Shown here one piece after another: positions 7,674 to 58,985 of a stretch of 64,000 nucleotides of DNA. Under the pieces are notes generated by a model that did no database searches, had not been told where the DNA came from, and was given only the letters and a program-made list of their open reading frames with translations. Each line of letters opens with the position of its first letter. The stretch's first letter is position 1. The position numbers and the translations under genes are program-made. The DNA comes from Selaginella moellendorffii (taxonomy: Eukaryota > Plantae > Lycopodiophyta): positions 124,001-188,000 of the forward strand of contig NW_003314384.1 in the NCBI RefSeq assembly GCF_000143415.4. Reading direction: 5' to 3'.

Positions 7674-9458
7674 ATGAGAGCTTCTTCTTCCTCTTCTTGT
7701 GGAGCTCTCCAGGTCACGCATCTCGCGAATCTACTGCGATCGTGTGGTAATTTTGGGGATCTCTCGGCGGGGCGGCGGATCCACAAGCGCGTCTTGGATC
7801 TCCAGCGGCAGCATGGCCAGGATGTCTTCCTCCTCAATCTCGTCATCGACATGTATGGCAAATGCGGGGGATTGGGGGAGGCCAGGGCGGTGTTTGATGC
7901 GATCGAGCATCCCAATGTCTTCTCATTCAACATTCTCATCGCATCCTACGCCTCGGCAGGGCTGCTCGAGGAGGCTTGGAAGATCTTCCATGCGATGCCG
8001 GGCAGGAATGTGGTGTCTTGGAACACGATGGTGTCGGCAAATGCCCAGGAAGGGGATTTTTCCCGAGCGAAGATCTTTCTGGCGAGGATTCCACAGCACA
8101 GCCTGGTGGCCTGGAATGCGATGATCGGAGGGTTTGCTCGAGAAGGGAGATTTTTGGAGGCCAAGAGGCTGTTTGATGCGGCCAAAGTGAGGGATGTGGT
8201 GATTTGGAACGCGCTGATCCACGCGAAAGCCGCAGTGACCGGGGGGATCGAGGATGTGGAGTCTTTGTTCTCGAGGATTCCGTGCTGGGACGTGATATCG
8301 TGGAACGAGATGCTAGCAGCGTACACCAAGCATGGAAGTCTGAATCGAGCAAAAGCTTTCTTCGATACGAGGATGCTCCAAAGGGATGTGTTCTCGTGGA
8401 ACACAATGGCTGCTGCGTTTGCTCGGATGGTTCACCAGTCAGGGGCAGCAGGAAAGAAGTTTTTCGAGAGAATGCCACAGCACAACACGGTCTCCTGGAA
8501 CAGCATCGCCCAGGGGCTCTCGGAGAACGGCCTATTCGACGATGCAAAATCGCTTTTTGAGAGCATGGGCGATCGCGACTCGGTGTCAATGATCCAGATG
8601 GCGGTGACTTACGCGCGAAACGGGCATCCGGAACAAGCCCAGGAGCTTTTCTCACGGATCTCCCCAAGAACAGTAGCGGTGTGGAACGCTCTTCTCTGGT
8701 CGTATGCCCGGAACGGGCATCTCTCCGAGACCTTGGCCACCTTTCACCGGATTCCCATGATGAATCGCATCACTTGCACCGTGATCATCGAAGTTTACGG
8801 CCGGAGCAGCCGCCTGGAAGAGGCCGAGACGCTGTTCTTCGAGAAAGTCCTGGAGAAGGACATGGTTTCGTGCATCGCAATGATGGTGGCATACTCCCAC
8901 AATGGTCGCCTGGACGGAGCACTGGCCGTGTTCGAGAGAATCCAGCACTACCCGGAGGTGATGGTTTGGACTGCAATGGTGGCGAGCTACGTCCACAATG
9001 GAGAGCTCGAGATGGCCACTATGATCTTCCGGAAGATCGCTCTCCAGGGACTCCAGCCGGATGGTATCACCTTCGTCACCATCCTCACAGGTTGCAGCCA
9101 TCTCGGGCTCGTGAGCCGGGGAAGAGAATTCTTTCGATCGATCGAGTCGGCGTTTGGGATGAAACCCGGCGTGGAGCACTACTGCTGCATGGTCGACGTT
9201 CTCGGGCGAGCCAAGCATCTGGAAGAGGCGGAGGAGCTCGTGAGAACGATGCCGTTTCTCCCCGACGCGGTGGCATGGAACACGCTGCTGGGAGCTTGCC
9301 GGATCCACGGAGATATCATGCGCGGCGAGCGAGTAGCCAAGATGGTCGCGGAGTTGGACGAGAGGAATCAAAGACCTCACTTGCTGCTATCGAATCTCTA
9401 CACTTCCAGCGGCGATCTAGACGTAGAGCTCGAGTTACTAGCAGCTATGGTGAGCTAA
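7674..9458 (+). CDS. PLS-class PPR protein with E domain, no DYW
   Basis: 594-aa intronless ORF with tandem short PPR motifs (VSWN..M..AY..NG) and a C-terminal HYCCMVDVLGRA...MPFLPDAVAWNTLLGACRIHG. Confidence 0.93.
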   Translation: MRASSSSSCGALQVTHLANLLRSCGNFGDLSAGRRIHKRVLDLQRQHGQDVFLLNLVIDMYGKCGGLGEARAVFDAIEHPNVFSFNILIASYASAGLLEEAWKIFHAMPGRNVVSWNTMVSANAQEGDFSRAKIFLARIPQHSLVAWNAMIGGFAREGRFLEAKRLFDAAKVRDVVIWNALIHAKAAVTGGIEDVESLFSRIPCWDVISWNEMLAAYTKHGSLNRAKAFFDTRMLQRDVFSWNTMAAAFARMVHQSGAAGKKFFERMPQHNTVSWNSIAQGLSENGLFDDAKSLFESMGDRDSVSMIQMAVTYARNGHPEQAQELFSRISPRTVAVWNALLWSYARNGHLSETLATFHRIPMMNRITCTVIIEVYGRSSRLEEAETLFFEKVLEKDMVSCIAMMVAYSHNGRLDGALAVFERIQHYPEVMVWTAMVASYVHNGELEMATMIFRKIALQGLQPDGITFVTILTGCSHLGLVSRGREFFRSIESAFGMKPGVEHYCCMVDVLGRAKHLEEAEELVRTMPFLPDAVAWNTLLGACRIHGDIMRGERVAKMVAELDERNQRPHLLLSNLYTSSGDLDVELELLAAMVS

Positions 9459-9520: not shown

Positions 9521-11857
9521 ATGTTGATCATGGTGGCCGCGAATTCTTGCTGGAATCTAGCACTCGCAGCGACGTCCTCGATCTTCCAGTATCATAGCAG
9601 CGACGCTGACGATGGAAGAATCCACACAGTGGTCCGGCGATCCAGGAACAAGATGACCAAGAAACGCGAGCTCCTCCAGCGCAAGGGGCGAATCTCCAAG
9701 GAAGAGATTGGCCTGGAGCAGCTGCTGCGGAATCCCGACACCACCACCTACGCGATCCTCCTCCGCCGGTGTGGCCGCGCTCGAGCGCTGGCAGAGGGCA
9801 AGCGCGTCCACGCGCAGATCTTCAAGACTGGCCACGATCGCGAGACGCGGCTGAGGAATCTCTTGATCCAGATGTATGGCGAATGCGGCAGCTTGATCGA
9901 CGCGCGCAAGGTCTTCGATCGCACGCCGGATCCAAACATCTTCTCGTGGAACATCATGCTCGCAGCGTATGCCCACAATGGGCATTCCAACGAGGCGCTG
10001 GTTCTGTCGCAGAGGATGAAGGACAGTGGCGCCACCGTCGTCCCGGATCGAGTGACTTACGTGATCCTCCTCCACGCGTGCTCGAATCTGGGCGCGCTGC
10101 GCGAGGGGCGGATGATCCACGCGAGCGTCATCGCGAGCGGGATGGAATCCAACGTCGTGGTGGCCACCGCAATCGTCAACATGTATGGCAAGTGTGGTAG
10201 CATGGGCGATGCGAAGATGGTCTTCGACAAGATGCCCGCCAAGGACGTGATCTGCTGGAACTCGATGATCTCGGCCTATGCGCTGAATGGATTGGGCAAG
10301 AGCGCGCTGGATCTCTACGCGCGGATGAGGCACAGCTGCGTGAGGCCCGACGCTGGGACGTTCGTGGCGGCGCTGGATGCGTGCTCGGTGCTAAACTCGC
10401 TCGAGGATGGGAAGAAGATCCACGCCGCCATCGCCGCGAGCAAGCTCGAGTGGAATGTGATGGTGGCCACCGCTCTGGTGAGCATGTATGGGAAATGCGG
10501 CTGCCTGGAGCGATCCATCGCGGTGTTTCGCGCGATGGAGGTGAGGAACTTGATCTCCTGGACGGCGATGCTGGGCGCGCTCGCGCACAATGGTCGCGAC
10601 GCCGCGGCGCTGGAGCTCTTCGCCAGGATGCGCGACGAGGGCGTGAGGATCGACGCGGTGGCGATGACAATCGCGCTGGACGCGTGCTCGCGGAGCCGGG
10701 ACTTCACGCGGGGGAGGGAGATCCATGCGATGATCGACGCGGCGGTGGCGGGCAGGAGCTTGCGATCGATCACTCCAGTGCTCGCTGCCGCGATCGTCAA
10801 CATGTATGCGTGCTGCGACGAGATGGATCTCGCGAGAGCGATAGTGGCGAGGCAGCGCGAAGCTCTCCTCTGGAACGCGCTCATCGCGGCCTACACTGCT
10901 CGCGGCCATCCCCGCGAGGGGCTGCGGCTCTACGCGGAGATGATCCTCGCGGAGAGGCGAGGAGCTCCGCCCGTCCGGCCGGATCGAAACACTTTCGCGG
11001 CGGTGCTCGAGGCGTGTGGATCCATTGGAGCCGCGGCGCTGGGCGAGGGGCGGATGATCCACACGCAGGCCATCGCCAGAGCTTGCAACACGGACGCGAT
11101 CGTCGCGTCGGCCTTGATCGCGATGTATTCCAAGTGCGGCAGCTTGGGCGACGCGGTGGCGATCTTCCGGGAGCTCTCGCGGAAGAGGAGCGTGGTGCTG
11201 GTCACCACCATGATCGCGGCTTACGGCCACCATGGAAAGCTCGAGCTCGCGCTGGAGCTCTTCTGGGAGATGGCGCAGCGAGGATTGAAGCCCAACCGGA
11301 TCACTTTCGTCAGCCTTCTCTCGTCTTGCAGTGCCGCAAATTCTCTCCGTGAGGCCGTGTTCTACTTCCAGATCATGATCCACGACTGTGACATCCAGCC
11401 GGGCGCCGAGCACTACCACTTCCTCATCGATCTTCTTGGGCGGTCGGGAAAGGTGGCAGAGGCCGAGGAGCTCATCAACTCGATGCCGTTTGCGCCCGGT
11501 TGCGGCGCTTGGATGAGCTTGCTGGCCGCCTGTGAGAGGCACTCGAAGGTGGAGCTGGGAAGAAGAGCTGCGGATCGAGTTTTCGAGATGGAACCAAAGA
11601 ATGCACTAGCTTACTTGATGCTTGGGAAGATCTACGTCGCAGCCGGGATGTGGGACGAGCTCCTCCAGCTCAAGAAGCTTATGGAGGATAGGGGTCTCAA
11701 GAGGGAGCCGAGTGGTAGTAGTAGTAGTAGTAGTAGTAATAATCCTCCCACCACCACCACCACCACCACAGACTACCACCATTCTTCCTTGCGTGATAAC
11801 GAGAAAGATCCACTGACTTTGAGGCCTCCAGCGTACATTCTTGGACCCCGTCCCTGA
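9521..11857 (+). CDS. PLS-class PPR protein (E domain) with atypical low-complexity C-terminal tail
   Basis: 778-aa ORF with P-L-S triplets and HYHFLIDLLGRSG...AYLMLGKIY...MEDRGLKREP, followed by a poly-Ser/poly-Thr tail. The N-terminus resembles a transit peptide. Confidence 0.93.
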   Translation: MLIMVAANSCWNLALAATSSIFQYHSSDADDGRIHTVVRRSRNKMTKKRELLQRKGRISKEEIGLEQLLRNPDTTTYAILLRRCGRARALAEGKRVHAQIFKTGHDRETRLRNLLIQMYGECGSLIDARKVFDRTPDPNIFSWNIMLAAYAHNGHSNEALVLSQRMKDSGATVVPDRVTYVILLHACSNLGALREGRMIHASVIASGMESNVVVATAIVNMYGKCGSMGDAKMVFDKMPAKDVICWNSMISAYALNGLGKSALDLYARMRHSCVRPDAGTFVAALDACSVLNSLEDGKKIHAAIAASKLEWNVMVATALVSMYGKCGCLERSIAVFRAMEVRNLISWTAMLGALAHNGRDAAALELFARMRDEGVRIDAVAMTIALDACSRSRDFTRGREIHAMIDAAVAGRSLRSITPVLAAAIVNMYACCDEMDLARAIVARQREALLWNALIAAYTARGHPREGLRLYAEMILAERRGAPPVRPDRNTFAAVLEACGSIGAAALGEGRMIHTQAIARACNTDAIVASALIAMYSKCGSLGDAVAIFRELSRKRSVVLVTTMIAAYGHHGKLELALELFWEMAQRGLKPNRITFVSLLSSCSAANSLREAVFYFQIMIHDCDIQPGAEHYHFLIDLLGRSGKVAEAEELINSMPFAPGCGAWMSLLAACERHSKVELGRRAADRVFEMEPKNALAYLMLGKIYVAAGMWDELLQLKKLMEDRGLKREPSGSSSSSSSNNPPTTTTTTTDYHHSSLRDNEKDPLTLRPPAYILGPRP
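11714..11770. repeat. Compound (AGT)n / (CAC)n microsatellite inside the PPR CDS
   Basis: ggtagtagtagtagtagtagtagtaataatcctcccaccaccaccaccaccaccaca encodes GSSSSSSSNNPPTTTTTTT. Confidence 0.9.
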
Positions 11858-19162: not shown

Positions 19163-19938
19163 CTACCCTTTGCTGTAAGCAGGTCGTACGTTTGTGTTGC
19201 TGAAGAGGTAGTACGCAGAAATCGCCGCTGAGAATGCGAACAACACCGTCGAAATGAACGAAGTAACCAGCGAAGCTCCGAGCTGGTGACAAAACCGTCC
19301 GAAGAGGGAACAGACTTTGAGCCAGGATGCCTCTGGTGGTGCGTGAGCCCCCATATACGCAACCTCCGTTGATGCCGCAGCGGCTGCTAGGAGAACGTAA
19401 GTTATGAGCTGCAGACAAGAAAACGCTTCAACTCCCAATCTGATTGAAATTCTTTCAACAGGTGTGACCTGATCGAACACGAAGATGAACCATGCTATAG
19501 CCTTGGAGCGCTCGGCAGATATGATCGACAAGACCAACACAAGGAGCGTGTAACCAGCGCCGATTCCTGCCGCAGAGACGAGATATCTGAAAAGAAACCA
19601 GCGAGTAAACACAGTCGATAAGCGAACGAAACATGAGACGAACGTGAAGACTTAAGAAAGAAAGAGAGGAGAAAACCGTGAAAAACTTACACAAACGCCT
19701 TGGCCAAGTCGAAGCTGACCGTCTTGGTGATCGTCAAGTTATTGAAGCCTGGGACCTGAATGGCACTAGTCTGCTTATCCGTGATGAGAACGACCATGGT
19801 GACAGCGCAACACACAAACGCAGCGAAGCGAAGCATCAGATCCGTTCTCTTCAATCCTTTGCAGCCTTTCTGCTCCCCGGCAGAAATTGGAGGAGAGATT
19901 TGCTTGTCAGCAGCGACTGGAATTCGATGCTCGCTCAT
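19163..19938 (-). CDS. CASPL: CASP-like protein (CASPL, 4 TM), 3 exons
   Basis: DLMLRFAAFVCC...DKQT, AFVYLVSAAGIGAGY, FVFDQLITYVLLAAAAA and WLKVCSLFGRFCHQ. Confidence 0.93.
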
Positions 19939-20239
19939 TTTCGCTCTAGCTCTGCTCGACTCAACGCATTGGTAAGCTACTTTGAGTTTAAATACTCGTG
20001 ACTCTCTCAAGCGTGATTACTTTTCCATTGTTTTTTCCTTCCAGGGAAATACATCCATGGTCTTCCTAGTCACAGGTCAATGACAGCTAACGAGAAAGCG
20101 TCGCACGGGCATGAAGCAGATGAGTAGAAAGATTTTCTCCCCTCTTTCTCTCCACTCCTGATACTTTAAAGTAAATTTTTTCACAGGCGTTCTAGAAAAG
20201 CATCCGGCTTTTGCGTTCACACACACACTCGCGAGCGGC

Positions 20240-21766
20240 ATGGTGGTCAACTTGGCGTCCGTAGAGCAATTCAGCCGAGATCTCAAACAGTGCGCCGGTA
20301 CGAAGGACTTGAAACAAGGCCGGAAAATCCACCTTGCAATCCTCAGCAGCCAGCACCGACACAACACTTTCGTCTCCAACCTGCTCGTCCACATGTACTC
20401 GAGCTGCGGCAAGCTCCACGAAGCAATGGCCGTCTTCTCTCGGATCCCGGAGCCCAACATCTTCTCTTGGAACATCATGCTGGCGGCTTTCGTGTGGAGC
20501 GACGAGCTGGGAGAGGCCCGGAAGCTCTTTGACAGAATGCCACACAGGAACGTAGTCTCCTGGACGACGATCTTCCGAGCTTATGCCCAGAGCGGGCATC
20601 TGGACCAAGCCAAACTTATGTTCGATCAAATGCCCGAGTGGGACGTGGTCTCGTGGACGGCGATGGTTCAAGCTTACGCCGAGAATGGAGAGCTTTTGCA
20701 AGCGGAAAATATGTTCTCCCAGCTTTCAGACCGAAATATCGTCGCTACGAACGCTATGATCACGGCTTATGCCCAGAGAGGACAGGTCTCTCAAGCGAAG
20801 AAGCTGTTTGAGGAGATGCCCGAGAGAGATATCTCGTCCTACAACGTCATGATTCTGGCGTACTCGCAACAAGGACTGATGGAAGAATCTCGGCTGGTTT
20901 TTGACTCCATGCCTTGCCGCAACCTCGTCTCGTCGACCACCATGGTGCAAGCGTATGCCCAGAAGGGGTATATCGAAGAAGCCGAGAGGATTTTCAACCG
21001 GATGGTAGAGAGAGACGACGTTTCCTGGACCACCATGCTCCAGGCCTACGCTTCCAACGGCAACATCGAGAGAGCTCAAGAGACGTTCCGAGACATGCCA
21101 AGGCAGGACTTAGTCGCATGGACTGCGATGGTTTGCCTCTACGCACAAAACAGGCACACCAAGGCTGCGAAGTTCGTCTTCGACAGGATGCCGGAGAGAA
21201 ATGCCGTGTCGTGGATCCTGATGATAACAGCTCTCGGCCGAGATGGAAAGGTTGAGCAAGCACGGAAAATGCTCGACACAATGCCTCACTGCACAGTGGC
21301 TTGCTACAACGCCATGATCGGATGCTACGGACAGAATGGTCACGTCGAGGACGCCAGCGAAATTTTTCGACTCATGATCGTGGAGGGTGCCGTGCCCGAC
21401 GAGGCAACGTTCACGAGCGTTCTCGGAGCTTGTAGCCATGGTGGTCTTTTGGAGGATAGTCTCCACCACTTTAGAGCTATGCCGGACCAGCACGGTGTCG
21501 AGCACGTAAGGGAGCACTACTGCTGCGTGGCTGACATCCTGGGAAGAGTTGGGAAGCTAACGGAGGCTCACGAGTTGCTGAATTCGATGCCTCTCAGGCC
21601 TGGAGCTATCGGCTGGACATCCTTCGTTGGAGCTTGCATCACACACTCGGATGGCATTATCTCCGGAGTCGAGGGAGTGGAGAATGTTTTGGAGACGAAT
21701 CACTCCGAAAGTCTGGGGAAGCACTTGCCTTACGTGATGCTGGCGAACGTTTTGAAGAAATATTAA
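20240..21766 (+). CDS. PLS-class PPR protein (E domain, no DYW); may extend 5' via exons 19927-19971 and 20045-20075
   Basis: 508-aa ORF with tandem short PPR motifs and HYCCVADILGRVG...MPLRPGAIGWTSFVGAC. The frame stays open back to a phase-1 AG acceptor at 20186. Confidence 0.92.
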   Translation: MVVNLASVEQFSRDLKQCAGTKDLKQGRKIHLAILSSQHRHNTFVSNLLVHMYSSCGKLHEAMAVFSRIPEPNIFSWNIMLAAFVWSDELGEARKLFDRMPHRNVVSWTTIFRAYAQSGHLDQAKLMFDQMPEWDVVSWTAMVQAYAENGELLQAENMFSQLSDRNIVATNAMITAYAQRGQVSQAKKLFEEMPERDISSYNVMILAYSQQGLMEESRLVFDSMPCRNLVSSTTMVQAYAQKGYIEEAERIFNRMVERDDVSWTTMLQAYASNGNIERAQETFRDMPRQDLVAWTAMVCLYAQNRHTKAAKFVFDRMPERNAVSWILMITALGRDGKVEQARKMLDTMPHCTVACYNAMIGCYGQNGHVEDASEIFRLMIVEGAVPDEATFTSVLGACSHGGLLEDSLHHFRAMPDQHGVEHVREHYCCVADILGRVGKLTEAHELLNSMPLRPGAIGWTSFVGACITHSDGIISGVEGVENVLETNHSESLGKHLPYVMLANVLKKY

Positions 21767-21822
21767 AAGGTACGCTATAGGTAGAAGGGTTTTTGCTTAA
21801 TTCTTTTTGTTCTTTGGCAGGG

Positions 21823-23780
21823 ATGGATGCCGCAGCCCTCTATGCCGGGACGGTTCTTCTTCGTAAGACATTCGAGGCGCTCGCGCAGCGCTCCGTCACG
21901 TCACTCTTCACGCGGCTGCATTCCAGATTCAGTGGGCAGCATCGGGTTCGTGTTTCCTTTTATTTTCATCAATCAATGACAAGTTTATTCCCTACAGATT
22001 GAGCTCTTGCAAAAGGAGCTGGAATCCAGACTTCAGGTACGTTTAGCAAGCTACACTAGCAAGCTAGCAGTTTTTTGGAGCCACCCATCTGATTTAAGTT
22101 GGTTTTTGTGACGCAGGTTCTCAGCCTTCCCGTGGATATGTGTGTGCAATACGTGCTCCATGGAAACACGGTTCTACAGGTCAGTGTTTAATATTCTTTC
22201 ACTGTTTCCAGATGTTTTTCTGATTCATGCAGGGCGCTTTGGACATGATATTGCGTGTGATCAATGACATTGTGAGATTCCAAGAAGAACTTGAATCTCA
22301 AGTTTATAATGAGGTGTGTTTTTTTCTCTACAAGAAAATTGCTGTGACCCAATCTTCCAGGACGTCGTCAAAACCTCTCCATCCGAGGCAGAGAACAGGC
22401 TACAAGGTTTTCTCACAAGGTATTGCCTTTTGAGACTCTTCTTTTGCTTAAAATTGTGGAGCTGCAGACTGGATGCCATCTTGCCGTACATGGCGATGGC
22501 TATGAACGCTGTCTCGTTGCTAAAGTCAGAAGAGGATGGAATTTCTCCAGCACGTTTGATGGACGCCAGCTATTTGGTTGTTTTTTATTTTTATGCTCAC
22601 TCTTTTCTCACTAGCAACGTTTTTTCTCGCAGATTCGGGGTGCTGAAATTGGGAATGCTGTTCTGAGTTTCCGAGTGAAGCTTTATGAATATGAAACTCG
22701 ATTAACGCTCCCTCGCTGGCAAGAAAAAATTCCGCACTGCACTTTGACACTCAGAAAATTGGTGCCTTTACCGGACGCAGAAGCCGAGTTTCTCGTTGAG
22801 ATTGATAATTCGGTTCGTCAATTTCTCAGTTTTCTTTTTTCGTGGTTTTGAGCTATTGTCTGCATTTTCATATCCAGGATGAAGATCACAATGAGAATAA
22901 CCACCAGCATATATCGATACCTCTTTCAAATGTGGCTGCCATTGGTAATCATAAACTTGAGCAGCTGTGTTTGAATAATTTTCTTCTGTTGATATAGGTT
23001 CTTCCACTTTGCATGTTCTTGGGCTTGGACAACATGAGTTAGAGGCCGTCCTTCTCATTGACGTATATGCTACTTCCGGTCTTATTTGCTTTTCAAAAAC
23101 TTGGATTTGGTCTAGCTCTGACCCAGGTCTTTGTGTCCAGATAATTCGCCCGAACCTCTAGAATCTCCAGCAGGGGTGAGAATGAAAGAACTTGATGTGA
23201 AGCTAGTAATTTTCCTGTCAGGATCGACCTCAAGTCACAAGGATTGTTCACTATGCATTGCAATGCATGGATGGGGATGATGGTGGTGACAACGACAGTG
23301 CGTCGTCGAGTACCCAAAGCAGTGAAGCCTTGGGCCTGGAAGATCATGTTGGAGCAAGAACAGCAAAGCTTGGAGTTCTAGAGGTGGGATTATGTTACAT
23401 TTTCCTTTCTTCTTACCCCCTTTCCCTTGCAGTACGTCCTAAGGTTGTGCATTCTCCAAATCCGCGAGGAGAAGGATCATTGGCTCGTCCCAGACGAGCG
23501 GATAAGAATGTTTTTCGCTGATCCCAGGTTTAGTTTGTCTGATGCTTCCTTCTCATAATCCTTGAAGCGCATGCGTCGTCTACACAGATTCAACAGCGAG
23601 CCTGTGAGAAACACATCCAAGCCTCACAGACCACCGGGAAGTGGCAACTTAACGCCCAGAAACTCAACACCTCTGAGCGGGACAAAATCGTTGATAAGAA
23701 CTCCCACGACTCGAGGAAGCCGGAGAACAGTCACGGACATGTTTTACGAGCTCAACCTGGACCACCCCGCTCCTCAGTAA
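21823..23780 (+). CDS. Multi-exon gene resembling the RanGTP-binding protein Yrb30 family (Pfam Ran-binding)
   Basis: Spliced reading: LQKELESRLQVLSLPVDMCVQYVLHGNTVLQGAL...INDIVRF; FLTRLDAILPYMAMAMNAV...GISPARLMDASYL; KLYEY...WQEKI; LEYVLRLCILQIREEKDHWLVPDERIRMFF. These parallel the recalled Yrb30 blocks (SPAIDL..GNTSL, AIPLINLA..VSPSRLLQAS, LEYLIRL..LQ...H..I.D....FL). GT-AG introns keep frame. Confidence 0.7.
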
Positions 23781-25014: not shown

Positions 25015-25330
25015 CTAGATAAGCTGCGGACATTTATGAGCACAAAGAAGAAAAGAACTAAGTGGCAAAAGAGCCAAGAAGAAACATGGACGAAGGCTAG
25101 ACATCTATGTAAATGGGGAGAAAAGACACTGTCGAAAGTAGAGTGGGGGAGAAGCTGCGGACATGTATGAGCAAGTCAAGCAAAAAAAAAAAGAAAAACT
25201 GAATGGCAAAAAAACAAAAGCTATGGAGGGACAATTACTGGACAAGCTACAGACATTTATGAGCATGAAGAAGGAAAGAACTGAGTGGCAAAAGAGCCAG
25301 GAAAGGACAAAACATGGACGAATTGTAGAT
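25015..25330 (+). repeat. Three imperfect ~80-bp copies in a decayed region
   Basis: aagctgcggacat(t/g)tatgagca...aact(g/a)a(g/a)tggcaaaa...atgga recurs near 25020, 25152 and 25244. Confidence 0.65.
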
Positions 25331-25787
25331 ATAGACTGCCAGCTAGGATGGTGGATACTCAAAGTTTACTTTGTCACAGTACAAACGAATATTCACCCGT
25401 TCTGCTGTAAGTTCTGAACAAATCATGAAACTCTGTTTTGATCGCATGGAGTCAGTCATAAAAAAAACCAACAAGCTCTCACCTTTCACTCACTGGAAGT
25501 ATGAAAGCAACACTCTTTTTATCTCAACCCTCAAGACAGAGGAAACATTCCAAAGCCAACACCTCGCTTCTAGAAGCAGTCCAGAAAAAAGTGATGGGAC
25601 AAGAGAGAAAGCAAATCGAAGAGAGCTAGAGAACATACGAGGGAGCGACTTGATCTCATTCCCAGTGGCCAAGTCCACCACCGCACCATCGATGTCGATT
25701 GTGTAGCCGCTCCCGAGAACCCAGCACGGTAGTCGCATAACCCCCAACTCGCTTCATCGTGCCCAAGTTGCTGCAAGCGACGAACAC

Positions 25788-31359: not shown

Positions 31360-34270
31360 CATAGCTTCAAAACACGAACACGGCATTCAATTTTTTGAAC
31401 ACGAACACGGAACACGGAAATGAACACGGATAAACACGGGTGAAAACATGAATATTCTCTAGAATATTCTACTTATCACTCCATCTCATCTAGAAGCTCC
31501 TCATTAGCAGGATCATCATCTTCGTCTTCATCCTCTTCTTCCATAGCTTCAATATCAACATCAGTAATTTGAGGAATACTTCCTGTCTGGCTCAATCCCA
31601 CAAACTTGTCATAGGAAGTGTGGCTCCCTATCAACTTGGTATTATTGGCCACAAATACAAAGTCTGCAATCCAGCTCACTACTAAGCAATTCCTCTTCTT
31701 TGAAGTGATGTGCCCAAAAATGCTGAATAGTCGCTCCACAGATGAGGAAGAACTTGCCTGACTAAGCACTCGAATTGCCAACCTCTGCAAATCTGGACCT
31801 GAGTAGCCATTGTCCTCCCACCACTGCACAGAACCCTTTGTTGTACGATCCATCTGAGAGTCCCCGGTGCCAAAACTACCCTCCAAGTTCCTGTATTGGC
31901 AAAGCTGATTTTTTATAGTTGACCTTTGTTGATAGTTAGGGAACTGGATCTCCAAGTACATGTTCCAATCTTTGGAAACTTCTCTGGATTTTTCCTGTCC
32001 TCGCCCCTGAAACTTTGGATCAAGCATGTATGCCACGGAGTGAAAGGTGCTATGATAAGCCCACCACCTATTTGAAATCAGTTGGTTTAGCTCCTCATAC
32101 CTAAGATTGTTCTCCTCTTGTTGACGGATGTTCTCGCTCATCTGATCCATCCCCTCGTAGACCTTCTCAATCACAGGCACGTCTCCGTCAACCATCTGTA
32201 GCAAATACATCACCCTCCTTGAAACACCCAGCATGTGGTTAACCTCGTTCCAGTATATATTGTTGAACACAATTCCTCGGCATGCTATTCCAGAATCTAT
32301 CCTTGACTCTAGCCTTGCATTGTAAGCATCGCTCACAAACATTTGTTGTAGCTTTGGCCTCAGCTCCACCAATCTCTCCATCATAAGAAAGTTGAAGGCG
32401 AATCGTGTTTCGCTGAACTTCAACACTTGTCGTGAAGAGAAGGATGCCAAAATCGCTACTAGATGCGAATGGTTCCGGAGGAAGCCAACCAGAGTCTTTC
32501 CCTTATCTAGCAGCCCAACCATCCATGGTAGTTTTGCGAAATCCTTGAGAATGTTATTCAAACAATGAGCTAAGCATGGAGCCCACATAATCCTTGGCTT
32601 CCTCGCCTCTAGAAGCCTAGCAGCAGCCTTGTTTGAAGCCTTACCATCCGTGACAATAAGAACAACATTCTCCTCTCCAACAATCTTGATACCTCGCTCC
32701 CATGTCGCAAAAACGTTATCAGCTGTCTTCCCACTAGAAGATATATCAATGGCCTCGAGAAAAGTCGACTGTCCTCTGCTGTATGCAACAAGCCCCATGA
32801 TATGTCAATTTCTTGTGTCATTCCATGCATCAGCAACAAGAGTAACCCCACAATTCTTCCAACGTGCCTTCACCTTGGCAAGTTGAACTTCAAGATTGGC
32901 TTTCTCCACTTGCAACAATTGCTCTCGCAATGCTGTCTCTGTTGGAAGATCGTAGGGAATTCCATGCCTTGCAATCTGCTGCACCATCTCCTTGAAATGG
33001 TGAGAACGAGCTTTCACAAATGGTATGTGCTCGTTCCAGAAAAATCATCCTATAGCCATATCCACTACTTCCTTCCTTTTTGGATCAAAAGAATCTTGGA
33101 TTCCCTGCTGTCGTTGCGAAAAAAACCTGGAAATTCCTTCTACAGAATTGCCACCTAGTGTAGAACTCTAGGAAGCAATAAAACTCTCTCCTCCAGTGCT
33201 TTGGATGCCTTCGACACGTGTAGAAACTGCTCGTTTCTTGCTTTGGTGTTTTCCAGCCAAAACCTGGCCGTCGATGGTTTTAGCCATCTCCCTAAGCTGT
33301 TGTCTCTTCTCTGCTGAGATGACATCACAACTTAAGATTTCATGACCAGCTTCCCCTGTGAGATGTCCCCTCACACGATCCACACCTGAAACTTTGCCTC
33401 TCAACGAACACCACTTGCAAGACCAGCGTCGATGCCCACTACGGCAGTTTGTTTGATCACCAAGGATCACTTCTTCCCACCAAACAGATGATGGATGTCG
33501 CCCTGTTGAAGTCCTCCTACTCTGGCTCCCAGATGCCATCACTCAGCTCAACCTCTAAAATCCTGCACCTGCTTCTACTCCAATCCACAATCACTCAGTC
33601 CAACCTCTAAAATCCCACACCCTACTGCTGCTCCAATCCACAATTGCTCAGCCTCTAAAATCCCACACCCTGCTCTTGTTCCAATCCACAATTGGTCATG
33701 CCCTCTGCCTAAAAAATTTTTGAAAAACTCAAAATTTTAGAATCACGCCATCAATAACACAATTGCAACGCCAAGCAACTAAGAATCACAGCAATCTACA
33801 AAGATGCAGTGCCAAGTAGCTAAGAATTATGGCAGAAGCAATCCAAGGAGAAAATTTGGGAGAGAAAATCTACAAAACTGGAGACAATGATCAAGAATTT
33901 TTTGCAGCGAAATCAGACGTGGCTGAGCGCCATTCCTCCCACTCCAGCACTAGAATCCTAGAGAGGGCATTCCCAGCCCAAGAAAATTGCCATAGATTGC
34001 TGGAAAAACCTTTTGATTGATTGCAGGAATTTTTGATTGATCTCAAGACAAGAAAACATCAAAGTGCAAAATGCTCACGTGAACCACGTGAGCTATTGTT
34101 TTAGAACACGGAGTGGTCACACGGTATTTGACCATGTTTCAACCGTGTTTGGAGCCGTGTTTTGGAGCATTGACCGAGTCAATGAACACGGCCCGTGTTA
34201 ACACGGCTGGGGGCCGTGTTCGTGTCACCACGCCAACACGCCATGGTGCACAGCGTGTTTTGAAGCACTG
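31360..34270 (-). mobile_element. Full-length hAT DNA transposon (2911 bp)
   Basis: TIRs CATAGCTTCAAAACACG / CGTGTTTTGAAGCACTG (15 of 17 match), perfect 8-bp TSD CTGGATCC, subterminal aacacg repeats. Confidence 0.95.
31476..33542 (-). pseudogene. hAT transposase (BED finger, DUF659-type core, dimerisation domain) with three nonsense codons
   Basis: One continuous frame: WSCKWC...RVRGHL, TLVADAWND, VTDGKA, PCLAHCLN, ETRF, LRVLSQASSSSSVERLFS-type C-terminus. Stops at 33168, 33045 and 32805. Confidence 0.92.
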
Positions 34271-35214
34271 CTGGATCCACCTTCACCAACCATGGCATCC
34301 CAAGAATGAGATCCACATGATAGATATCTGCGAAATAAAAAGTCTCCACAAGTGTGATTTGTTAACCAACATTTCCAACCCCTCTACATAACCATTGAAA
34401 TGCTGAGTAAAGGTAGCTAAACTTTCCACCGTGTATGGAAGAACTCCTCGTGTCACCAAGCCATGCTCCACAATAACCTTTGCTGAAACAAAGTTGTCAT
34501 CGCTTCCACTATCTAATAAAATCTACATTGGACCGCCACGAAAACACGCCCTTCAGCATTAAAGCTGATTCATGAGTATCCTCAAGCTCCATCTTGCTCC
34601 ATACACAATTGAGTTGATGAACAATAATCGAAAGCCTCTTCCTCTGACTGAAATGATCATCCCCGTCATCCTCACCTTGCAAAGTTTACAACTTTTTAGT
34701 ATTTAACTTACTGTCAATAGCAGATTGGCCATTCCTCTTGCCCTGCTGCTTGTTCTTTAGTTGTGAATAGTATCTAAATTCGCCACAATGATGACAACCC
34801 TATCTATAATTTTTCATAAAGAACTTTTGCACTAAACCTAATACTCAATGACAAGCTCATTACTACTAAAGTGATGAAAGGACACTTGTGTTGCTATCTC
34901 TTTCAATAAATTTAAAGCTGGGAAATTATAACTTTGATTGTTTCTCATCTCTTAGTATTACAAAAGCCTCAAAACTCTCAAAGTGATAATCTTAAAACCT
35001 ATAGACATCCTACCAAATTTATAATAAATCTATAAGAAATAAATGAAAGAAGATTGGTGCACTATTATAGATTCTATTGCTCAATTGAGTGTCCAGACAT
35101 TCTTAAGCATATGGAAAAAGGAGATAAGATCAAAGGTTAATTTTGGGATAGCTAGCAAAAATACATTCAAACCATAGACTAATTCACCTATCTTGCCTTA
35201 TATAAATCTTGAGA

Positions 35215-35442
35215 AAATACCCATTTTACCATACATGGAAATGGCTATAGATATTATATCATTACTAAAGTTGGAAGAGGATGGAATTTCTTTAGCAAAT
35301 TTGATGAATACTAGCTATTTGGTTATATATTTTATTTTTATTTATTATTTTCTCACTCACAACTTTTATTCAGTAGATTTGGAGTGCTAAAAGTAGGAAT
35401 GTTTTTCTGAGCTTCCAATTGAACTTTTATGAATATGAAACA
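35215..35442 (+). pseudogene. Decayed exon-intron-exon fragment of the Yrb30-like gene (copy of ~22475-22700)
   Basis: ILPYMEMAIDIISLLKLEEDGISLANLMNTSYL versus ILPYMAMAMNAVSLLKSEEDGISPARLMDASYL. The intron is retained, followed by ...tttatgaatatgaaac. Confidence 0.88.
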
Positions 35443-36189
35443 TCAATGACTTGCAAGGACGATGTGATTTAACTTCAAATAACTAAGTTGGACATCACTA
35501 TCCTCAGCCAAGGCATAGGGCCACCAAGACCAAGTCAAAATCAATGAGAGCTCATTACTCTTATAAAGTTTAATAAAATGCAAGATATAGCCTACCACAA
35601 AGCACAATGCTACATAAGAAAGGCACAAATGTCACTTTTCTAGAAAAACACAATAGTTACATTTTTACACCAATTTTAGACTCTATCCAACTAAATTGCC
35701 TTAGCCCCAAAAGTTAACATCCTTTTCGGGTTGCATCATACAAATTACCTACTAAGGTCTAAGTTAACCAAAGTCAACTCTAACCCCTTCACTAGTTTGT
35801 ACTAGCTTACAAAATGGAATGGTTTTCGGGCAAAGTGATCAATAGATCAATTATTAGAAAAGCCTAAGAAAATTTGTGGAAAATTTTCTATCCTAAAGAA
35901 AGAATGACTCTCAATTTAGGAATATAAACTTTCAAGACTCAACCAACTTCCTCTTACTAACAACTTCACATAAGTTCACCTCAACATAAATTCTCAAGAC
36001 CCATAGTATGCTTAAGCTTCGAACATCATGCCCATATTTCTGATATCCAACACTGACATCCATAAAATATAAAATAAACATCTAAAGCTTAATCACGAAG
36101 ACCACATCTTTGGATATTCACATTGCAATTAACACTTTTCTTCAATCACTTTCAAGACTCAATGTGAAGCCAAAACATTAACAAAAAAA

Positions 36190-36420
36190 ATGACATGGAA
36201 AATCAAGCTTTAAGGAAAATTCCTCATCACTTGAAATAACAATACCACATCCACTAACACAAATATTAGCGATGTTAATACCTCAACTTTACACCTTCTC
36301 CATCCAACAATCTATTCCAAGTGCTAACGGATAAACCAATAAGTTATAGCAAGTGAATGCTATAACCCTTTTCAACATCTTAATGGGTAAACCCTTAAGG
36401 AAATAAGGTACCAACTTAAA
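36190..36420 (+). mobile_element. Possible highly eroded non-LTR (LINE) reverse-transcriptase remnant
   Basis: DMENQALRKIPH and TLFNILMGK resemble the LINE RT motifs D.EKAFD.IPH and P.LFNI; very AT-rich and degraded. Confidence 0.25.
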
Positions 36421-38957
36421 TTTAATATATCATAGATCATTATTGAGAATTTAGTCAAAGTTATTACAATACTACTACATGTAAGTAGACTAGCTTCACT
36501 ATCAACCACTTTGGGGTTGATCATTGTTTAACTAAATAACTTTGTAAACACATTACTCAATATCACATGGATATAATATAAAAATCACAATGAGCATCAA
36601 TTGAGCAACACCACAAGCAAGCTCACATTATTATTTCAAAAGTTTATATGAGTATCAAATGCCAACTTTATTTGACAAAATGCAATATAAATGCCACACC
36701 CCACCAATAGAGATTTACAACACCAAACACCACCACTTTTTGTTCATAGTACAAATAAGCTTATGCCACTCTTTTTTTTACCAAAATCAAAATTAGTCCA
36801 ACACCAAGCTACTTAAGGAGCAATAGCAAGGTTCTTTAAAAAAAAAATTAAGTATTGTAACCCAAGCTTTCTAATGGCAAGTATAGATAAAATTGTTTAG
36901 CGATTCATTGTTATCCATTCCACAACTCACCACTTATAAGACTATTATTTCCAACATGCATTAAGGTAGAGATTCTTGATTGCATGATGTGAACACAAGA
37001 AATGAGTCACATCTTATTGCAAATCATCTCTCCAAAAAAAAAAAATGATTTATGTGTTTGATCCGTCATCCCTAAAGACTCTCTTTTTGGTTTCATTTTT
37101 TACCAAACCTCAAGTTTGCTTTTGCATTGTTTTTAGTCCAATCTAAAAAAAGTTTATGAGAAAGCACAACAATGACTACTTGAACCAATAGACTAATACC
37201 TATAGTCTTGATTAATCCACTTATAATCATGCCTAAGAAGGATCTACTAGTGCAATGCTAAATAGCTATGGACTAGCATATTTGCCACTCATAGCAAACC
37301 CAGGGAAGGTTTACTTTTTCCCATAGTACACGGAACAACTCATGGAACCATTGATGATAACCAATAATATGCTAATATTAATCCTGCCAACTCAAAATGT
37401 AACCTTGAGTTGCAATGTGCCTCACTCACGAGCCCAAACACAAACTTGTGTAAAATGGTACACCTTAAATTCATTTTGCCAATTCAAAATGTACCCTTGA
37501 GTTGCTAATGTGCCTCACTCACAAGCCTAAGTGCAAACTCGTGTAAGTGGAACATCTCAATCCATTCTATAAGCCCAAATGCAAGCTCATACAACTTAGT
37601 ATAAAAAGGTAATGAAAACCCATACCCAAAGGAACGAATGTAAAGCCTTTGCACCTAAATGTGTACCTATTTAGATTATCATCTTTATCTCTGCATATGC
37701 AACAAGACTAGTTGCCCAATCTCATTGGATAGTACTCGCCAAGACTCATTCTCTAATACTAAATGTAGCATATATGGTTTTTACCCTTTATCCTATGGTA
37801 AATTAATATAGGATAACCACAAAGTGGAACTTAAACCTTCTATGTACCACATATCACATGCCACATGCCACATGTTATATGCCACATGTCCAAGGACAAT
37901 AGTGCAAAACCCAAGTTTTAGGGCTTTGGGCCACTGAATAAAAGGACGGAGCCAAACTCTTTGTAAGCGACTAATTTTTCCATTCTACTTTAGTCACTTA
38001 ACCGCACCTTCGACCGCTTGGAGGAGTCTCATTCACAACCTCCTTAAGTCCAATTCAGGACTTGGGGCTTGCTAGCCCAAGAATGGCATCCATGCCACTC
38101 ATCGCTTGCACTTAGTCCAAGTGCTCCACGTGTCCAGTCCCAAGACCGACACCCAAAGGCACCACTGACATATCGACCCGTTACACTAAGGCCATGCCTA
38201 TTCACCTTTGCCGCACTAGTGGTCCAATACCACTTGCATCACAATCCCGTCTCTCCAAAACTGGGCCATCCGTCCACGGGTGGTCAACCCAGATCCACTC
38301 TTTAGCATCCTTAGGATGCCCACAGACATGAAGAATAGCCTTCCCCAATATCCCTTTGTTAGTTCCTACCAAGTCCCTTTTCTGTCCATGGCCATGTTCG
38401 CCAACACTGCCACTCGATCAAGGCCCATAGGCCCGACCACTAAGTCCCACGGTCCTCTGGGACTTCCTCACCACACGACCGTGTCCTTGGTCACTACCCC
38501 AGAGGACTGCTCCCCTTCCTTTTCACAGTCTAGGCCTTTGGGACAACATTTTGGAACACCGTGGCCTTACGCGAGCCACCTGGGTACTCTCCCCACCTTT
38601 CGCCTTTAGGTGCTCTAGCCATGGGCTTAGAGCGAGGTTCCGTTGAGCCACACCTGGTATCCAAGTAGGTAGTGCCACCCACACTTGGATTGGGAGCATC
38701 GGCCAGTCGATCTCCCGGGGGAACTAGAGCCGGCTCTTGAACACTTCACCAAGCTACCCCGCTTGTCGGTTTGTATTCACTCTAGTCTTGGACTTCCCAG
38801 TGGTTAGTTCATCACCCAACACTGGGTCTGGCCTTCCTGGGCCAAATTGGCCTTTCCTGGCCAAACTGGCTCCACTACAGTCTTCCCCCTTACTATACTT
38901 TTGGAGCTCACCAAACCCCCCAGGGTCTGGGAGACGAACGCTTTGAGCTTTCACCCT

Positions 38958-39400
38958 CTCAGACTCGGACTCGGACTTGGACTCGGACTCAGACTCGGAC
39001 TTGGACTCGGACTCGGACTCGGACTTGGGCTCGGGCTCGATCTCAGCCTTGGCCTCGGTCTTGGTCTCGGTCCCGGTCTCGGTCCCGGTCTCGGTCTCGG
39101 TCTCGACCTCGGACTCCATCTTGGGTCCTTCTCGGACTCCATCTCGGACTCCATCTCGGGCTCCGTCTCGGTCCCTCTTGGACTCCATCTCGGGTCCATC
39201 TCAGACTCCGTCTCGGTCCATCTCGGACTCCATCTCGGGTCCATCTCGGACTCTGTCTCGGTCCACCTCGGACTCCATCTCGGACTCCATCTCGGGTCCA
39301 TCTCGAACTCCATCTCGGGTCCATCTCGGACTCCGTCTCGGACTCTCACTTCGGACTCTATATCGGACTCTAACTAGGGTCCGTCTCGGACTCCATCTCG
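38958..39400. repeat. Hexamer array (CTCGGN/CTCCAT) in the left LTR
   Basis: Runs of gactcg, gtctcg and ctccatctcgga. Confidence 0.95.
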
Positions 39401-42400
39401 AACACTTCCACGTGTCATGTGTTGGTCTTTTTTGGGTCCCTTTTTGGAGCCTTGCTTATTGCTCGCTTCATGCTCGCTCCTTGAGCACTTTGTTGGGAGT
39501 TCCACTCCCGCTCTCGACCTTCCAAGTTAGAGCTTTTAGTCCAAACGTGTTACACTCGTTTGGGCTTTCGCTTCGGCCACTACCACGTGGCACCCTTTCC
39601 GGTTCCACTTTGGGGCCTAGGGATTTTGTGTCTCACAACTCCACCACCTATAGACGAAGTTCAATGTCCTCATCGAACGGTAAACCATTTTATAAAATAA
39701 CACCCGCATGTGTTACCATTTCCATCCTTGGCCCCTAGCCACTATTTGTCAATGGTTTGACATTGAAGGCTCACCATGCCTTCTCCATATTCGTCAATGG
39801 TTCGACACTAAAGGCTCACCATGCCTTGCCCATCCTCTAAGGAGGATAGTCTCTCCAACTTAGAGACTCACTTGGTTTGCTCCTTTCTATTGGTTTAATT
39901 CTCGCTAAACCTGTTAGAGACACCCTCTCTAACTCAATTCCACTACTCATTCTTGAGTAATCACAGATTCCATTGATCTACCTTTGCACTTTGGAACATT
40001 TACTTTTGACTTTTTGGAGTCAATTTCCTAGGTGTCTCCAACACCTTGCCTTGCACATTTTGTGCAACTCCACTTCCCCTCCTAGGAAGTTCTCTACTCG
40101 AGGGCACCCTCATTCTCTTTTCTATTTTTGTGCCACCATTGGCATTACATTCCATTTATCATTATTTGTGCTAGGGCTGTCCACGGCTCTATCTTTTGGC
40201 TACTTAGTTGCTCCCTCACTTGGAGCCTTTCTTTTGCCAAACTGGAGCACTTGGGAATCCATCCCTGGAAGTCCACTTCTTTTTTCGCAATCCGTTAGCA
40301 TCAAACACATTAGTGTTCCTTGGCTAACTTTGCCACTTGGATTCTTTCCAATGGATTCCACGGCTCTATCTTGGGCACTCGTCTTTTGCTCCTATCCTTA
40401 GATTGTTGCGCCAAGCAACATAGGATCATTACCTCCCTCCTTGAGGTATTCTTTTGGTTCCATAGCAAAGGATCTGCTTTGCCCAGACTAGGATGTTCAC
40501 CCCTAGTAAGTCTCCCCACTGTTCTAGGCTCTCTTCCTAGCCCAACCTTGTGACCCACCCATGGGCCTGTCTCTGGAGACTATTTTCTTAAACTCATAAT
40601 ACCATTGTATTGTAGTAGTTCATTTCCCTTAGGTGTCCTTCCCACTTAGTCACCTTAACCAAGCCACACCTTTATCAATAGTTCAAATCAACACTTTGAA
40701 CTAAGAACCTTATTCCTTAGCCCAAACAAGGACCTTGTCTTTATTTAGCCACAAGATCACCTAGTGATCTCACCTCGGCACCTTAACAGGTTTGCCAATA
40801 GGTACTAGGTCTTCCAGACCTTTAACTTGTTAACTACGACCCCGAGGGCATCCCCCACACTTGGCAGTGCGCCCAAGCCAGCCTTTCTGGCCAAGGGTCC
40901 GTAGCAACTGAGACTTGGGTGTCCCCATCTCATCCACCACATCCTTGGTGCCCTTTGCACCAAAGTATTCAAGTTAGATATGCCAAGCTTTCACTCTAAG
41001 CAATCTAACCGTGCATCACGACTCCGGGGCATCCCCCGCTTGGCGGTGTGCCGAAGCCAATCTCCTCATTGAGAGTCCATGACCACCGAAATATGAGTGT
41101 CCTCATATTCCAAACCATCACCACGCCCTAGTGATTTGGGACTCGAACCCAAGCACTAGAGGTTCGGGACTCGAACCCAACCTCCGTATATGCATCTACG
41201 GATGGCATCCCCCAGGATGCCTGGCGTGACTCTCCACGCCGGTGCACCAACTTTTACTCAAAGCGCGCTACAGATCACAGCTTAGGAACCTAGTTCCTCC
41301 ACACTGCCAAGTCTTCTCACTTGACAAGTCTGTGATCATGCATGGACTCCTCCATGCTTGGCCCCATGGCCCACCCCTTTTGAAGTTATCACCTTCAACT
41401 AAGGTATTTGTTCCCCTGACTTGCTAATCTCGCTTTGGCAAGCCCTCCGACCACTGTAACATGGTTCTTGCACAAGCGTGAAAGCCCTTGATCATCGACT
41501 TTCATTCAAAGCCCTCTCTTTGAACACTCGGGAACTACTTCCCTAACCTTGATAGCCTTGCCTCATGGCAAGCTTCAAGACCACGCTTCTGCTGCGCCAC
41601 TCTAATTTCGCGCGTTCCTTGAACCATTTACGCTTGGCCTTTCTAGGTACTAAGCTACCTAGAATCATCCTTTGGGAACCTTGAAGGAACTCTGTCCTTT
41701 AGCCTTCTAAGGCCTCCCTTTTTGCAAGCTTTCCAATTACCATATAGTCTAACATGGACAATTCCATATTTTAGACTCTCCATGGCATCACGGTTGCTAG
41801 CGGCAACACCCTCGAGCCCCCACTTGATTCTCCACTCCTAGCTGGCATAACCAACCTTGGTTATGCCTTTCAATTCCTATGGTTTGGTTCTACCCCCTTA
41901 CTTCTTGCTTTTGGCTTCACACCTTTCCTTTGGTCATTCTCCTCCAGACCAGGAGGATAGCTTTGCACTTTCTATCATGCCTTAGCAAGTATTCTTAGGG
42001 ATGAACCTACCCGATAGCCTAGGGAGTGGTTCCTCAATCCAAGTATGCTCACCCTATAATCCCACACACCGAGATTACGTTGTTGCTTATGGGACTTTAC
42101 ATGCCCATCGCTAGCCTTGCCAAAATCATTTTTGGCTTTGTCCAATTCGAGTAGACAGTCTTCTCCTGTCTCCGCCCCCTTGGACATTTGGATAGCACCT
42201 TCTATCCATCATTCGCTAGGGACTTAGTCCCTTGGGCCTTATCTATTGCCCTCGCGACATCAAACACCACCTCCTGGTGTTCTAGAGTGTTCGGGTGTCC
42301 CAATGACGGCTTCCTTGACAATGAGTATTTCCTTTCATGACATTGACTTACTACATCACAACATAAGCAACTTATCCCCCGTAAGGGTATATCCAACTTC

Positions 42401-58882: not shown

Positions 58883-58985
58883 TCTTCCTACTAGCCACCT
58901 TTCTCCCCTTGCAGTGTTTCCTTTTTATAAAGAAGGTCCGTTAGGGTTCTTCGTGTCGTATCTAGAATGTAGGGCTTTTGAAGGT

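What the first reader, a model, noticed from the sequence alone, without database searches (positions are those of the whole stretch)
21823..23780. Intron-rich plant homologue of the 'fungal' RanGTP-binding protein Yrb30
The ORF track shows only scraps, but manual splicing of a dozen or so micro-exons gives a protein with Yrb30-like blocks in the right order (...PVDM...GNTVL, DAILPYM...ISPARLMDAS, LY...WQE, LEYVLRL..LQ....H...D.....F). I know this family mainly from fungi and not from angiosperms. The gene could reflect ancient retention (perhaps in flagellated-sperm plants) or an old horizontal transfer; the dense native-style introns argue for long residence.
Basis: partly seen in the sequence, partly recalled or inferred. 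Interest (0 to 1): 0.7.

Follow-up and report, generated by a model that had tools for sequence, protein, structure and literature searches.

The report
Yrb30-type Ran-binding gene in Selaginella
This is a real 13-exon gene of the spikemoss Selaginella moellendorffii that encodes a plant relative of the yeast Ran-GTPase regulator Yrb30, a family usually thought of as fungal; public databases already tag it with the family domain, so it is a modest curiosity, not a discovery.

Summary
Window 21823-23780 (+) carries 13 exons, all introns GT-AG and 46-80 nt, and the frame closes at 1287 nt (428 aa). All 13 exon translations occur in order in residues 340-767 of the RefSeq protein LOC112342911 of Selaginella moellendorffii (scaffold GL377688.1).

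That 428-aa part matches Pfam PF05508 (RanGTP-binding protein, the Yrb30 family) at E=6.9e-17 and 62 bits, against a cut-off of 25, over nearly the whole profile.

Relatives found: mosses, lycophytes, ferns and the zygnematophyte alga Mesotaenium. No seed-plant protein appeared in four searches.

A moderate-confidence model shows three parts:
- an N-terminal helical bundle;
- a PH-like domain whose best solved matches are Ran-binding domains, tied with EVH1 domains;
- a disordered tail ending in a conserved motif shaped like a nuclear export signal.

Retention versus ancient transfer from fungi could not be tested, because no fungal sequence was obtainable. The link to flagellated sperm is not supported.

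The RefSeq model fuses this gene to the upstream PPR gene through an out-of-frame linker. I read that as an annotation artefact.

The scan reached the same reading earlier on another piece of this genome (s1-344413).

The parts
21823..23780 (+). Whole coding region of the Yrb30-type gene: 13 exons, 428 codons plus stop (TAA 23778-23780)
   Evidence: Frame closure and GT-AG borders. Every exon translation is found in order in P0015 340-767.
21823..21945 (+). Exon 1 with the start codon. The N-terminus matches the N-termini of the moss, fern and lycophyte proteins.
21880..23062 (+). Span (introns included) that encodes residues 20-262, the stretch matched by Pfam PF05508 (profile 27-299 of 304)
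   Evidence: coordinates derived
21829..22641 (+). Span encoding the N-terminal antiparallel helical bundle (residues about 3-161; exons 1-7)
   Evidence: Models. The fold search found no specific relative (best Z 11, below the level that means anything for helical bundles).
22633..22812 (+). Exon 7. It encodes the first strands of the PH-like domain and the invariant ET.LTLP.WQEK block, which aligns with the AKLFRF...WKERG signature of RanBP1.
   Evidence: RanBP1 is the best PDB sequence match but E=1, not significant
22639..23477 (+). Span encoding the PH-like, Ran-binding-domain-like domain (residues 161-348; exons 7-12)
   Evidence: VIA-align: RanBP3 2y8g_B Z 14.0, rmsd 2.8, 117 of 118 residues; RanBP2 9b62_E Z 13.3; RanBP1 Z 13.2; Yrb2p Z 12.6. 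EVH1 and Dcp1 domains tie within 1 Z.
23730..23759 (+). Conserved motif [VI]xx[ML]FY[DE]Lx[LV] near the C-terminus, in an otherwise disordered tail. Its hydrophobic spacing fits a leucine-rich nuclear export signal.
   Evidence: Present in 8 of 8 full-length rows. The tail has pLDDT below 50. The export-signal reading is inference.
21770..21820 (+). 51-nt GT-AG intron-like stretch between the PPR stop codon and the ATG. The RefSeq model uses it to join the two genes; it is probably a 5'-UTR intron.
   Evidence: Sequence; P0015 reads ...ILKG|MDAA across it
20240..21766 (+). Upstream neighbour: an intact, intron-less PLS-type PPR ORF of 508 aa that ends 57 nt before the ATG. It is not part of the Yrb30-type protein.

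Best explanation
An ordinary, vertically inherited nuclear gene of Selaginella moellendorffii encodes a 428-aa member of the PF05508 (Yrb30) family. The protein has an N-terminal helical bundle, a PH-like domain of the Ran-binding-domain/EVH1 type, and a disordered tail with a conserved motif shaped like an export signal.

Shown here: the gene model, family membership by Pfam's threshold, the spread across non-seed streptophytes, and the fold class.

Inferred: the PH-like domain grips Ran-GTP much as RanBP1 does. The protein would then modulate GTP hydrolysis and karyopherin-Ran complexes in the cytoplasm and shuttle by Crm1-dependent export, as reported for yeast Yrb30p (Braunwarth et al. 2003, J Biol Chem; my own knowledge, not in the searchable library). 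The lineage leading to seed plants appears to have lost the gene.
For: - Gene model.
- PF05508: E=6.9e-17, 62 bits against a cut-off of 25, over profile 27-299/304. Six other plant relatives also pass.
- ESM Atlas by features: the top three clusters are PF05508 clusters, mostly Ascomycota, at 0.95, 0.94 and 0.92 with 211-220 shared features. By shape, the first row is the same cluster (TM 0.40).
- Relatives: Sphagnum, Ceratodon, Physcomitrium, Diphasiastrum, Ceratopteris, Adiantum and Mesotaenium at 45-59% identity.
- Expression in relatives: two relatives lie on intron-less RNA-assembly contigs, so spliced mRNAs exist.
- Tree: 12 plant rows show ferns monophyletic (100/99) with the alga outside, and nothing against vertical descent.
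- Fold: PH-like domain, best matches Ran-binding domains at Z 12.6-14.0.
- Motif: the best PDB sequence match of the domain profile is RanBP1, in the same register as the structural match.
Against:
- The model is only moderately confident (pLDDT 59, pTM 0.57).
- Ran-binding domains tie with EVH1 and Dcp1 domains, and ordinary PH domains score only 1-3 Z lower.
- Pfam's Ran_BP1 model (PF00638) gives no hit even at E up to 10, and the RanBP1 sequence match has E=1.
- The absence from seed plants rests on searches that need shared 5-residue words or a 60-aa query.
Confidence: 0.85

Rival explanations
1. The gene entered the streptophyte line by ancient horizontal transfer from a fungus, before Zygnematophyceae and land plants split. 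It then gained plant-style introns.
For: The named PF05508 clusters in the Atlas are mostly ascomycete. Plant hits are few and patchy, and no chlorophyte or other streptophyte alga was found.
Against: The match to the family profile is distant (62 bits over about 240 residues), as expected for deep divergence. The gene is present in an alga, mosses, lycophytes and ferns with a tree compatible with the species tree. It has 12 short native-type introns. The patchiness can equally be loss. The word-index searches could not have found fungal or other distant members, so the wider range of the family is unknown here.
Confidence: 0.1
2. The protein belongs to PF05508 but does not work on Ran. Its PH-like domain acts as an EVH1/Dcp1-type peptide binder or as a lipid-binding PH domain.
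For: EVH1 (Homer, Z 13.2-13.3) and Dcp1 (Z 13.1) tie with the Ran-binding domains, and many PH domains follow at Z 10-12. There is no PF00638 hit.
Against: The family's one characterised member binds Ran-GTP and competes with RanBP1 (own knowledge of Braunwarth et al. 2003). The invariant strand-1/strand-2 block aligns with the RanBP1 signature.
Confidence: 0.15
3. The 767-aa RefSeq protein is real: a PPR-Yrb30 fusion made from one transcript.
For: RefSeq LOC112342911 (P0015) joins PPR residues to the Yrb30-type part through two introns, 21506-21597 and 21770-21820. Both have GT-AG borders.
Against: - The fusion drops the first 141 residues of an intact 508-aa PPR ORF.
- It cuts a 92-nt intron into a gene class that normally has none.
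- It reads 58 residues (P0015 282-339) of the PPR C-terminal region out of frame to pass the PPR stop codon.
- All other plant relatives start at the same Met and carry no PPR part.
- The older model from the other copy (P0001) has no PPR part either.
Confidence: 0.05
4. The stretch is fungal contamination in the plant assembly.
For: Only the family's fungal reputation.
Against: The gene sits 57 nt after a plant PLS-type PPR gene. Three more PPR genes and a hAT element lie in the same window. A second, 95% identical copy exists in the same species. The closest relatives are all plants.
Confidence: 0.01

Closest known systems
Yrb30p (YGL164C) of Saccharomyces cerevisiae and fungal PF05508 proteins ('Ran-specific GTPase-activating protein 30')
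   Same: Same Pfam family by the curated threshold, over nearly the whole profile. Similar length (fungal clusters 459-484 aa against 428 aa). The predicted shape is nearest to the fungal cluster model.
   Different: Only distant sequence similarity. The host is a lycophyte. The gene has 12 introns. No biochemical data exist for any plant member. I had no fungal sequence by reference, so no residue-level comparison was made.
Ran-binding domains of RanBP1/Yrb1p, RanBP2, RanBP3/Yrb2p and NUP50 (Pfam PF00638)
   Same: PH-like fold with a C-terminal helix: Z 12-14, rmsd 2.4-3.9, 101-125 residues aligned. A strand-1/strand-2 block resembles AKLFRF...WKERG.
   Different: No PF00638 hit; identity in the structural alignments is 8-19%. 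The domain is preceded by a helical bundle that RanBP1 lacks. Yrb30p inhibits RanGAP-stimulated hydrolysis, whereas RanBP1 co-activates it (own knowledge).
EVH1/WH1 and Dcp1 domains
   Same: Structural scores as high as those of the Ran-binding domains (Z 12-13.3).
   Different: No sequence signal, and no known link between PF05508 and proline-rich ligands.

Membership tests
Pfam PF05508 (RanGTP-binding protein, Yrb30 family) | Score above Pfam's gathering threshold for the whole protein | tested here: met
   P0015:340-767 scores 62 bits against 25, E=6.9e-17. Single exons give no hit because they are too short.
Pfam PF05508 (RanGTP-binding protein, Yrb30 family) | Match covers the profile end to end, not one short motif | tested here: met
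   Residues 20-262 against profile 27-299 of 304
Pfam PF05508 (RanGTP-binding protein, Yrb30 family) | Independent similarity to fungal members | tested here: met
   ESM Atlas features: 9 of the 10 best hits carry PF05508, top scores 0.95, 0.94 and 0.92. By shape the support is weak (TM 0.40).
Pfam PF05508 (RanGTP-binding protein, Yrb30 family) | GTP-dependent binding of Ran and inhibition of RanGAP-stimulated hydrolysis | not testable with these tools
   This needs a pull-down and a GTPase assay. No Ran sequence was available by reference, so no complex prediction was run.
Pfam PF05508 (RanGTP-binding protein, Yrb30 family) | Functional nuclear export signal with Crm1-dependent shuttling | tested here: inconclusive
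   A conserved C-terminal motif has export-signal spacing in all 8 full-length rows. Such patterns are common, and its position relative to the yeast signal was not compared.
Ran-binding domain (Pfam PF00638, Ran_BP1) | Sequence match to the family model | tested here: not met
   No PF00638 hit at E up to 1 on whole proteins or up to 10 on the isolated domain of 10 relatives. The profile against RanBP1 gives E=1.
Ran-binding domain (Pfam PF00638, Ran_BP1) | PH-like fold of the RanBD type | tested here: met
   Z 14.0 to RanBP3 with 117 of 118 residues aligned, and Z 12-13.3 to RanBP1, RanBP2, Yrb2p and NUP50. EVH1 domains tie, so the fold alone does not single out Ran-binding domains.

The most novel reading that the evidence does not exclude
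The streptophyte PF05508 genes descend from one ancient fungus-to-alga transfer that predates land plants. The gene was later lost in seed plants, and perhaps in liverworts and hornworts.
Probability: 0.1. Interest if true: 0.55.

Novelty: new member of a known kind. Interest (0 to 1): 0.3.

Why it matters
Yeast databases describe Yrb30 as having relatives in fungi only (own knowledge). A well-conserved set of orthologues in mosses, lycophytes, ferns and a zygnematophyte alga shows that the family is older or more mobile than that. No copy was detected in seed plants, which points to a loss within the Ran system on the way to seed plants.

Physcomitrium has a copy, so a knockout and localisation study would be easy to do. 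The fold result suggests that PF05508 proteins hold a very divergent Ran-binding domain behind a helical bundle. That would explain why Yrb30p competes with RanBP1.

None of this is hidden from public databases, which already tag these proteins with PF05508. The value is a pointer, not a discovery.

Tried and rejected
- Exon-by-exon Pfam scan: no family hit, because the exons are 11-63 aa.
- ESM Atlas with exon 7 alone: nothing useful.
- Literature: no paper in the library holds 'Yrb30' in this sense, PF05508 or YGL164C.
- Two weak phmmer hits (P0005, P0009) are repeat proteins, not relatives.
- PDB sequence search with the full-length profile: no match.
- Genomic loci of the Sphagnum and Ceratodon genes and of the second Selaginella copy are not on record, so intron positions could not be compared between species.
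- N-terminal domain folded alone: a generic helical bundle with no informative match. The weak Foldseek rows to DH-PH tandems have rmsd about 19-23, and I do not rely on them.
- Word searches cannot reach fungal members, so no plant-plus-fungus tree was built.
- Complex prediction was not run, because no Ran sequence was available by reference.
- The bacterial-type promoter/terminator scan and the Rfam scan of 19-26 kb found nothing relevant.

Full report
**What is there**

On the + strand between 21823 and 23780 I delimited 13 exons by reading the three frames and the splice signals. Every intron starts with GT and ends with AG. The exon lengths sum to 1287 nt, so the frame closes on a TAA at 23778-23780. 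Introns are 46-80 nt and AT-richer than the exons (GC 0.30-0.45 against 0.49).

Each exon was handled by reference.

**Identity of the genome and check of the model**

An exhaustive phmmer search with exon 7 (60 aa) against 1.84 billion representatives gave nine hits. The best was P0001, SELMODRAFT_428281 of Selaginella moellendorffii, 95% identical over the exon. Another was P0007, a 441-aa Sphagnum protein that looks like a full-length counterpart.

A word search with P0007 returned P0015, RefSeq LOC112342911 of S. moellendorffii. All 13 exon translations occur in P0015 in order, at residues 340-767, with gaps of 0-1 residue where codons are split. P0015 is encoded on scaffold GL377688.1 of GCA_000143415.2.

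So the window is S. moellendorffii, my model equals the public one for this part, and P0015:340-767 can stand for the encoded protein by reference.

**Family**

Single exons give no Pfam hit because they are too short. The 428-aa protein matches PF05508, 'RanGTP-binding protein', with E=6.9e-17 and 62 bits against a curated cut-off of 25. Residues 20-262 align to profile positions 27-299 of 304. Six relatives from other plants also pass the threshold.

Independently, the nearest clusters in the ESM Atlas by language-model features are three PF05508 clusters, mostly Ascomycota, at 0.95, 0.94 and 0.92. By shape, the first row is the same 'Ran-specific GTPase-activating protein 30' cluster, though at a weak TM of 0.40. 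Membership in the Yrb30 family is therefore met by the family's own test.

**Distribution**

Four searches found only non-seed streptophytes: exon 7 against every representative, P0007, the ten-row profile A1 and the algal protein P0021. The organisms are:
- Sphagnum, Ceratodon and Physcomitrium (mosses);
- Selaginella and Diphasiastrum (lycophytes);
- Ceratopteris and two Adiantum species (ferns);
- Mesotaenium endlicherianum (a zygnematophyte alga).

Unnamed Logan proteins also turned up. By sequence and by tree position they are moss-like or fern-like. Two of them lie on intron-less RNA-assembly contigs, so intact spliced mRNAs exist in relatives.

The family is well conserved: 45-59% identity to the Selaginella protein, with long invariant blocks. 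A seed-plant orthologue of ordinary divergence should therefore share many words and be found, and none was. This is good but not final evidence of loss, because three of the searches depend on exact 5-residue words and the fourth used a 60-aa query. The same limit explains why no fungal protein was retrieved.

A tree of 12 plant rows has the ferns monophyletic (100/99), the alga outside, and a long Selaginella branch. Nothing in it argues against vertical descent within streptophytes.

**Origin**

The gene was present at least in the common ancestor of Zygnematophyceae and land plants. Whether it goes back to the common ancestor of plants and fungi or came by an old transfer cannot be decided without fungal and other eukaryotic sequences in one tree. 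I had none by reference.

The distant match to the family profile and the 12 native-type introns fit long residence under either reading. Mesotaenium has the gene, and Zygnematophyceae have no flagella (own knowledge). No hit came from liverworts, hornworts, cycads or Ginkgo.

**Structure and likely mechanism**

The AlphaFold2 model built on A1 is of moderate confidence (pLDDT 59, pTM 0.57). It shows:
- helices over residues 3-161;
- a seven-strand beta domain at 167-294, followed by a helix at 325-348;
- a disordered tail from residue 349.

With VIA-align the beta domain plus helix (161-348) matches Ran-binding domains best:
- RanBP3 2y8g_B: Z 14.0, rmsd 2.8, 117 of 118 residues;
- RanBP2 9b62_E: Z 13.3;
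- RanBP1 9n85_B: Z 13.2;
- Yrb2p 3wyf_E: Z 12.6.

A search that does not lean on Foldseek gives the same order. EVH1 and Dcp1 domains tie within one Z unit, and other PH domains follow at Z 10-12. The safe statement is therefore 'PH-like fold of the RanBD/EVH1 type'.

Two further points favour a Ran-binding-domain reading. First, the profile of the isolated domain (A3) finds human RanBP1 as its best PDB sequence. The invariant plant block around ET.LTLP.WQEK aligns to the AKLFRF...WKERG signature, in the same register as the structural match, although E=1 is not significant. Second, from my own knowledge of Braunwarth et al. 2003, Yrb30p competes with RanBP1 for Ran-GTP.

Against it, Pfam's Ran_BP1 model gives no hit.

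The N-terminal part folded alone (pLDDT 70) is a generic antiparallel helical bundle without an informative match.

The tail ends in a motif, [VI]xx[ML]FY[DE]Lx[LV], kept in all eight full-length rows. Its spacing fits a leucine-rich export signal, which would suit the Crm1-dependent shuttling reported for Yrb30p. This is inference only.

My best reading is that the PH-like domain grips Ran-GTP, the helical bundle alters what RanGAP or karyopherins can do with the complex, and the tail motif drives export. Binding was not tested, and no Ran sequence was available for a complex prediction.

**Context**

The gene starts 57 nt after the stop codon of an intact, intron-less 508-aa PLS-type PPR ORF (20240-21766). 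A 51-nt GT-AG stretch (21770-21820) lies in between.

RefSeq's P0015 fuses the two genes as follows:
- it starts at an internal Met of the PPR ORF (20663);
- it removes 21506-21597, which shifts the frame;
- it reads 58 residues (P0015 282-339) of the PPR C-terminal region out of frame, past the PPR stop;
- it splices 21769 to 21821 into the ATG.

No other plant relative has a PPR part, and all begin at the same Met. I therefore take the fused protein for an annotation artefact. The fused model may nevertheless reflect a transcript that spans both genes.

Another first-stage note (s1-431136) reads the PPR ORF as a cassette exon behind a shared leader.

**Verdict**

The gene is an ordinary member of a known family in an unexpected host group, and public databases already tag it with PF05508. 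The scan reached the same reading earlier on another piece of this genome (s1-344413).

- the exact exon map;
- the by-reference identity with RefSeq;
- the PH-like, Ran-binding-domain-like fold;
- the conserved C-terminal motif;
- the diagnosis of the chimeric RefSeq model.

Noticed in passing
window 20663-23780 (+): RefSeq LOC112342911 (P0015, 767 aa) is a chimera of the PPR gene and the Yrb30-type gene. It uses a frame-shifting 92-nt intron at 21506-21597 and then reads 58 residues of the PPR region out of frame. It probably reflects a transcript that spans both genes.
   Followed up: partly
window 19163-19938 (-) and 19939-20239: A CASP-like gene is called on the minus strand (placed from the gene table of locus L002). 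Its start lies only about 300 nt from the PPR ATG, so one short divergent region may drive the CASP-like gene one way and the PPR plus Yrb30-type genes the other way.
   Followed up: no
window 7674-9458, 9521-11857, 20240-21766, 58863-61781 (+): Four long intron-less PPR ORFs lie in 64 kb, one of them with an E motif. This fits the very large PPR family of Selaginella.
   Followed up: partly
window 31476-32798 (-): A 440-aa ORF carries DUF659 and a hAT dimerisation domain. It is a hAT-type transposase, apparently intact.
   Followed up: no
window 50920-52263 (-): An intron-less 447-aa ORF carries CAND6/7 N-terminal and GOST seven-transmembrane domains.
   Followed up: no
window 32001-44000: Strongly negative GC skew (-0.20 to -0.26) and lower GC (0.41-0.47) run over about 12 kb, unlike the rest of the window. 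The cause is unknown.
   Followed up: no
window 25036-25417: Short ORFs on both strands repeat similar lysine-rich peptides (KK..T.WQKSQE..). This looks like a degenerate direct repeat or the remnant of a mobile element.
   Followed up: no
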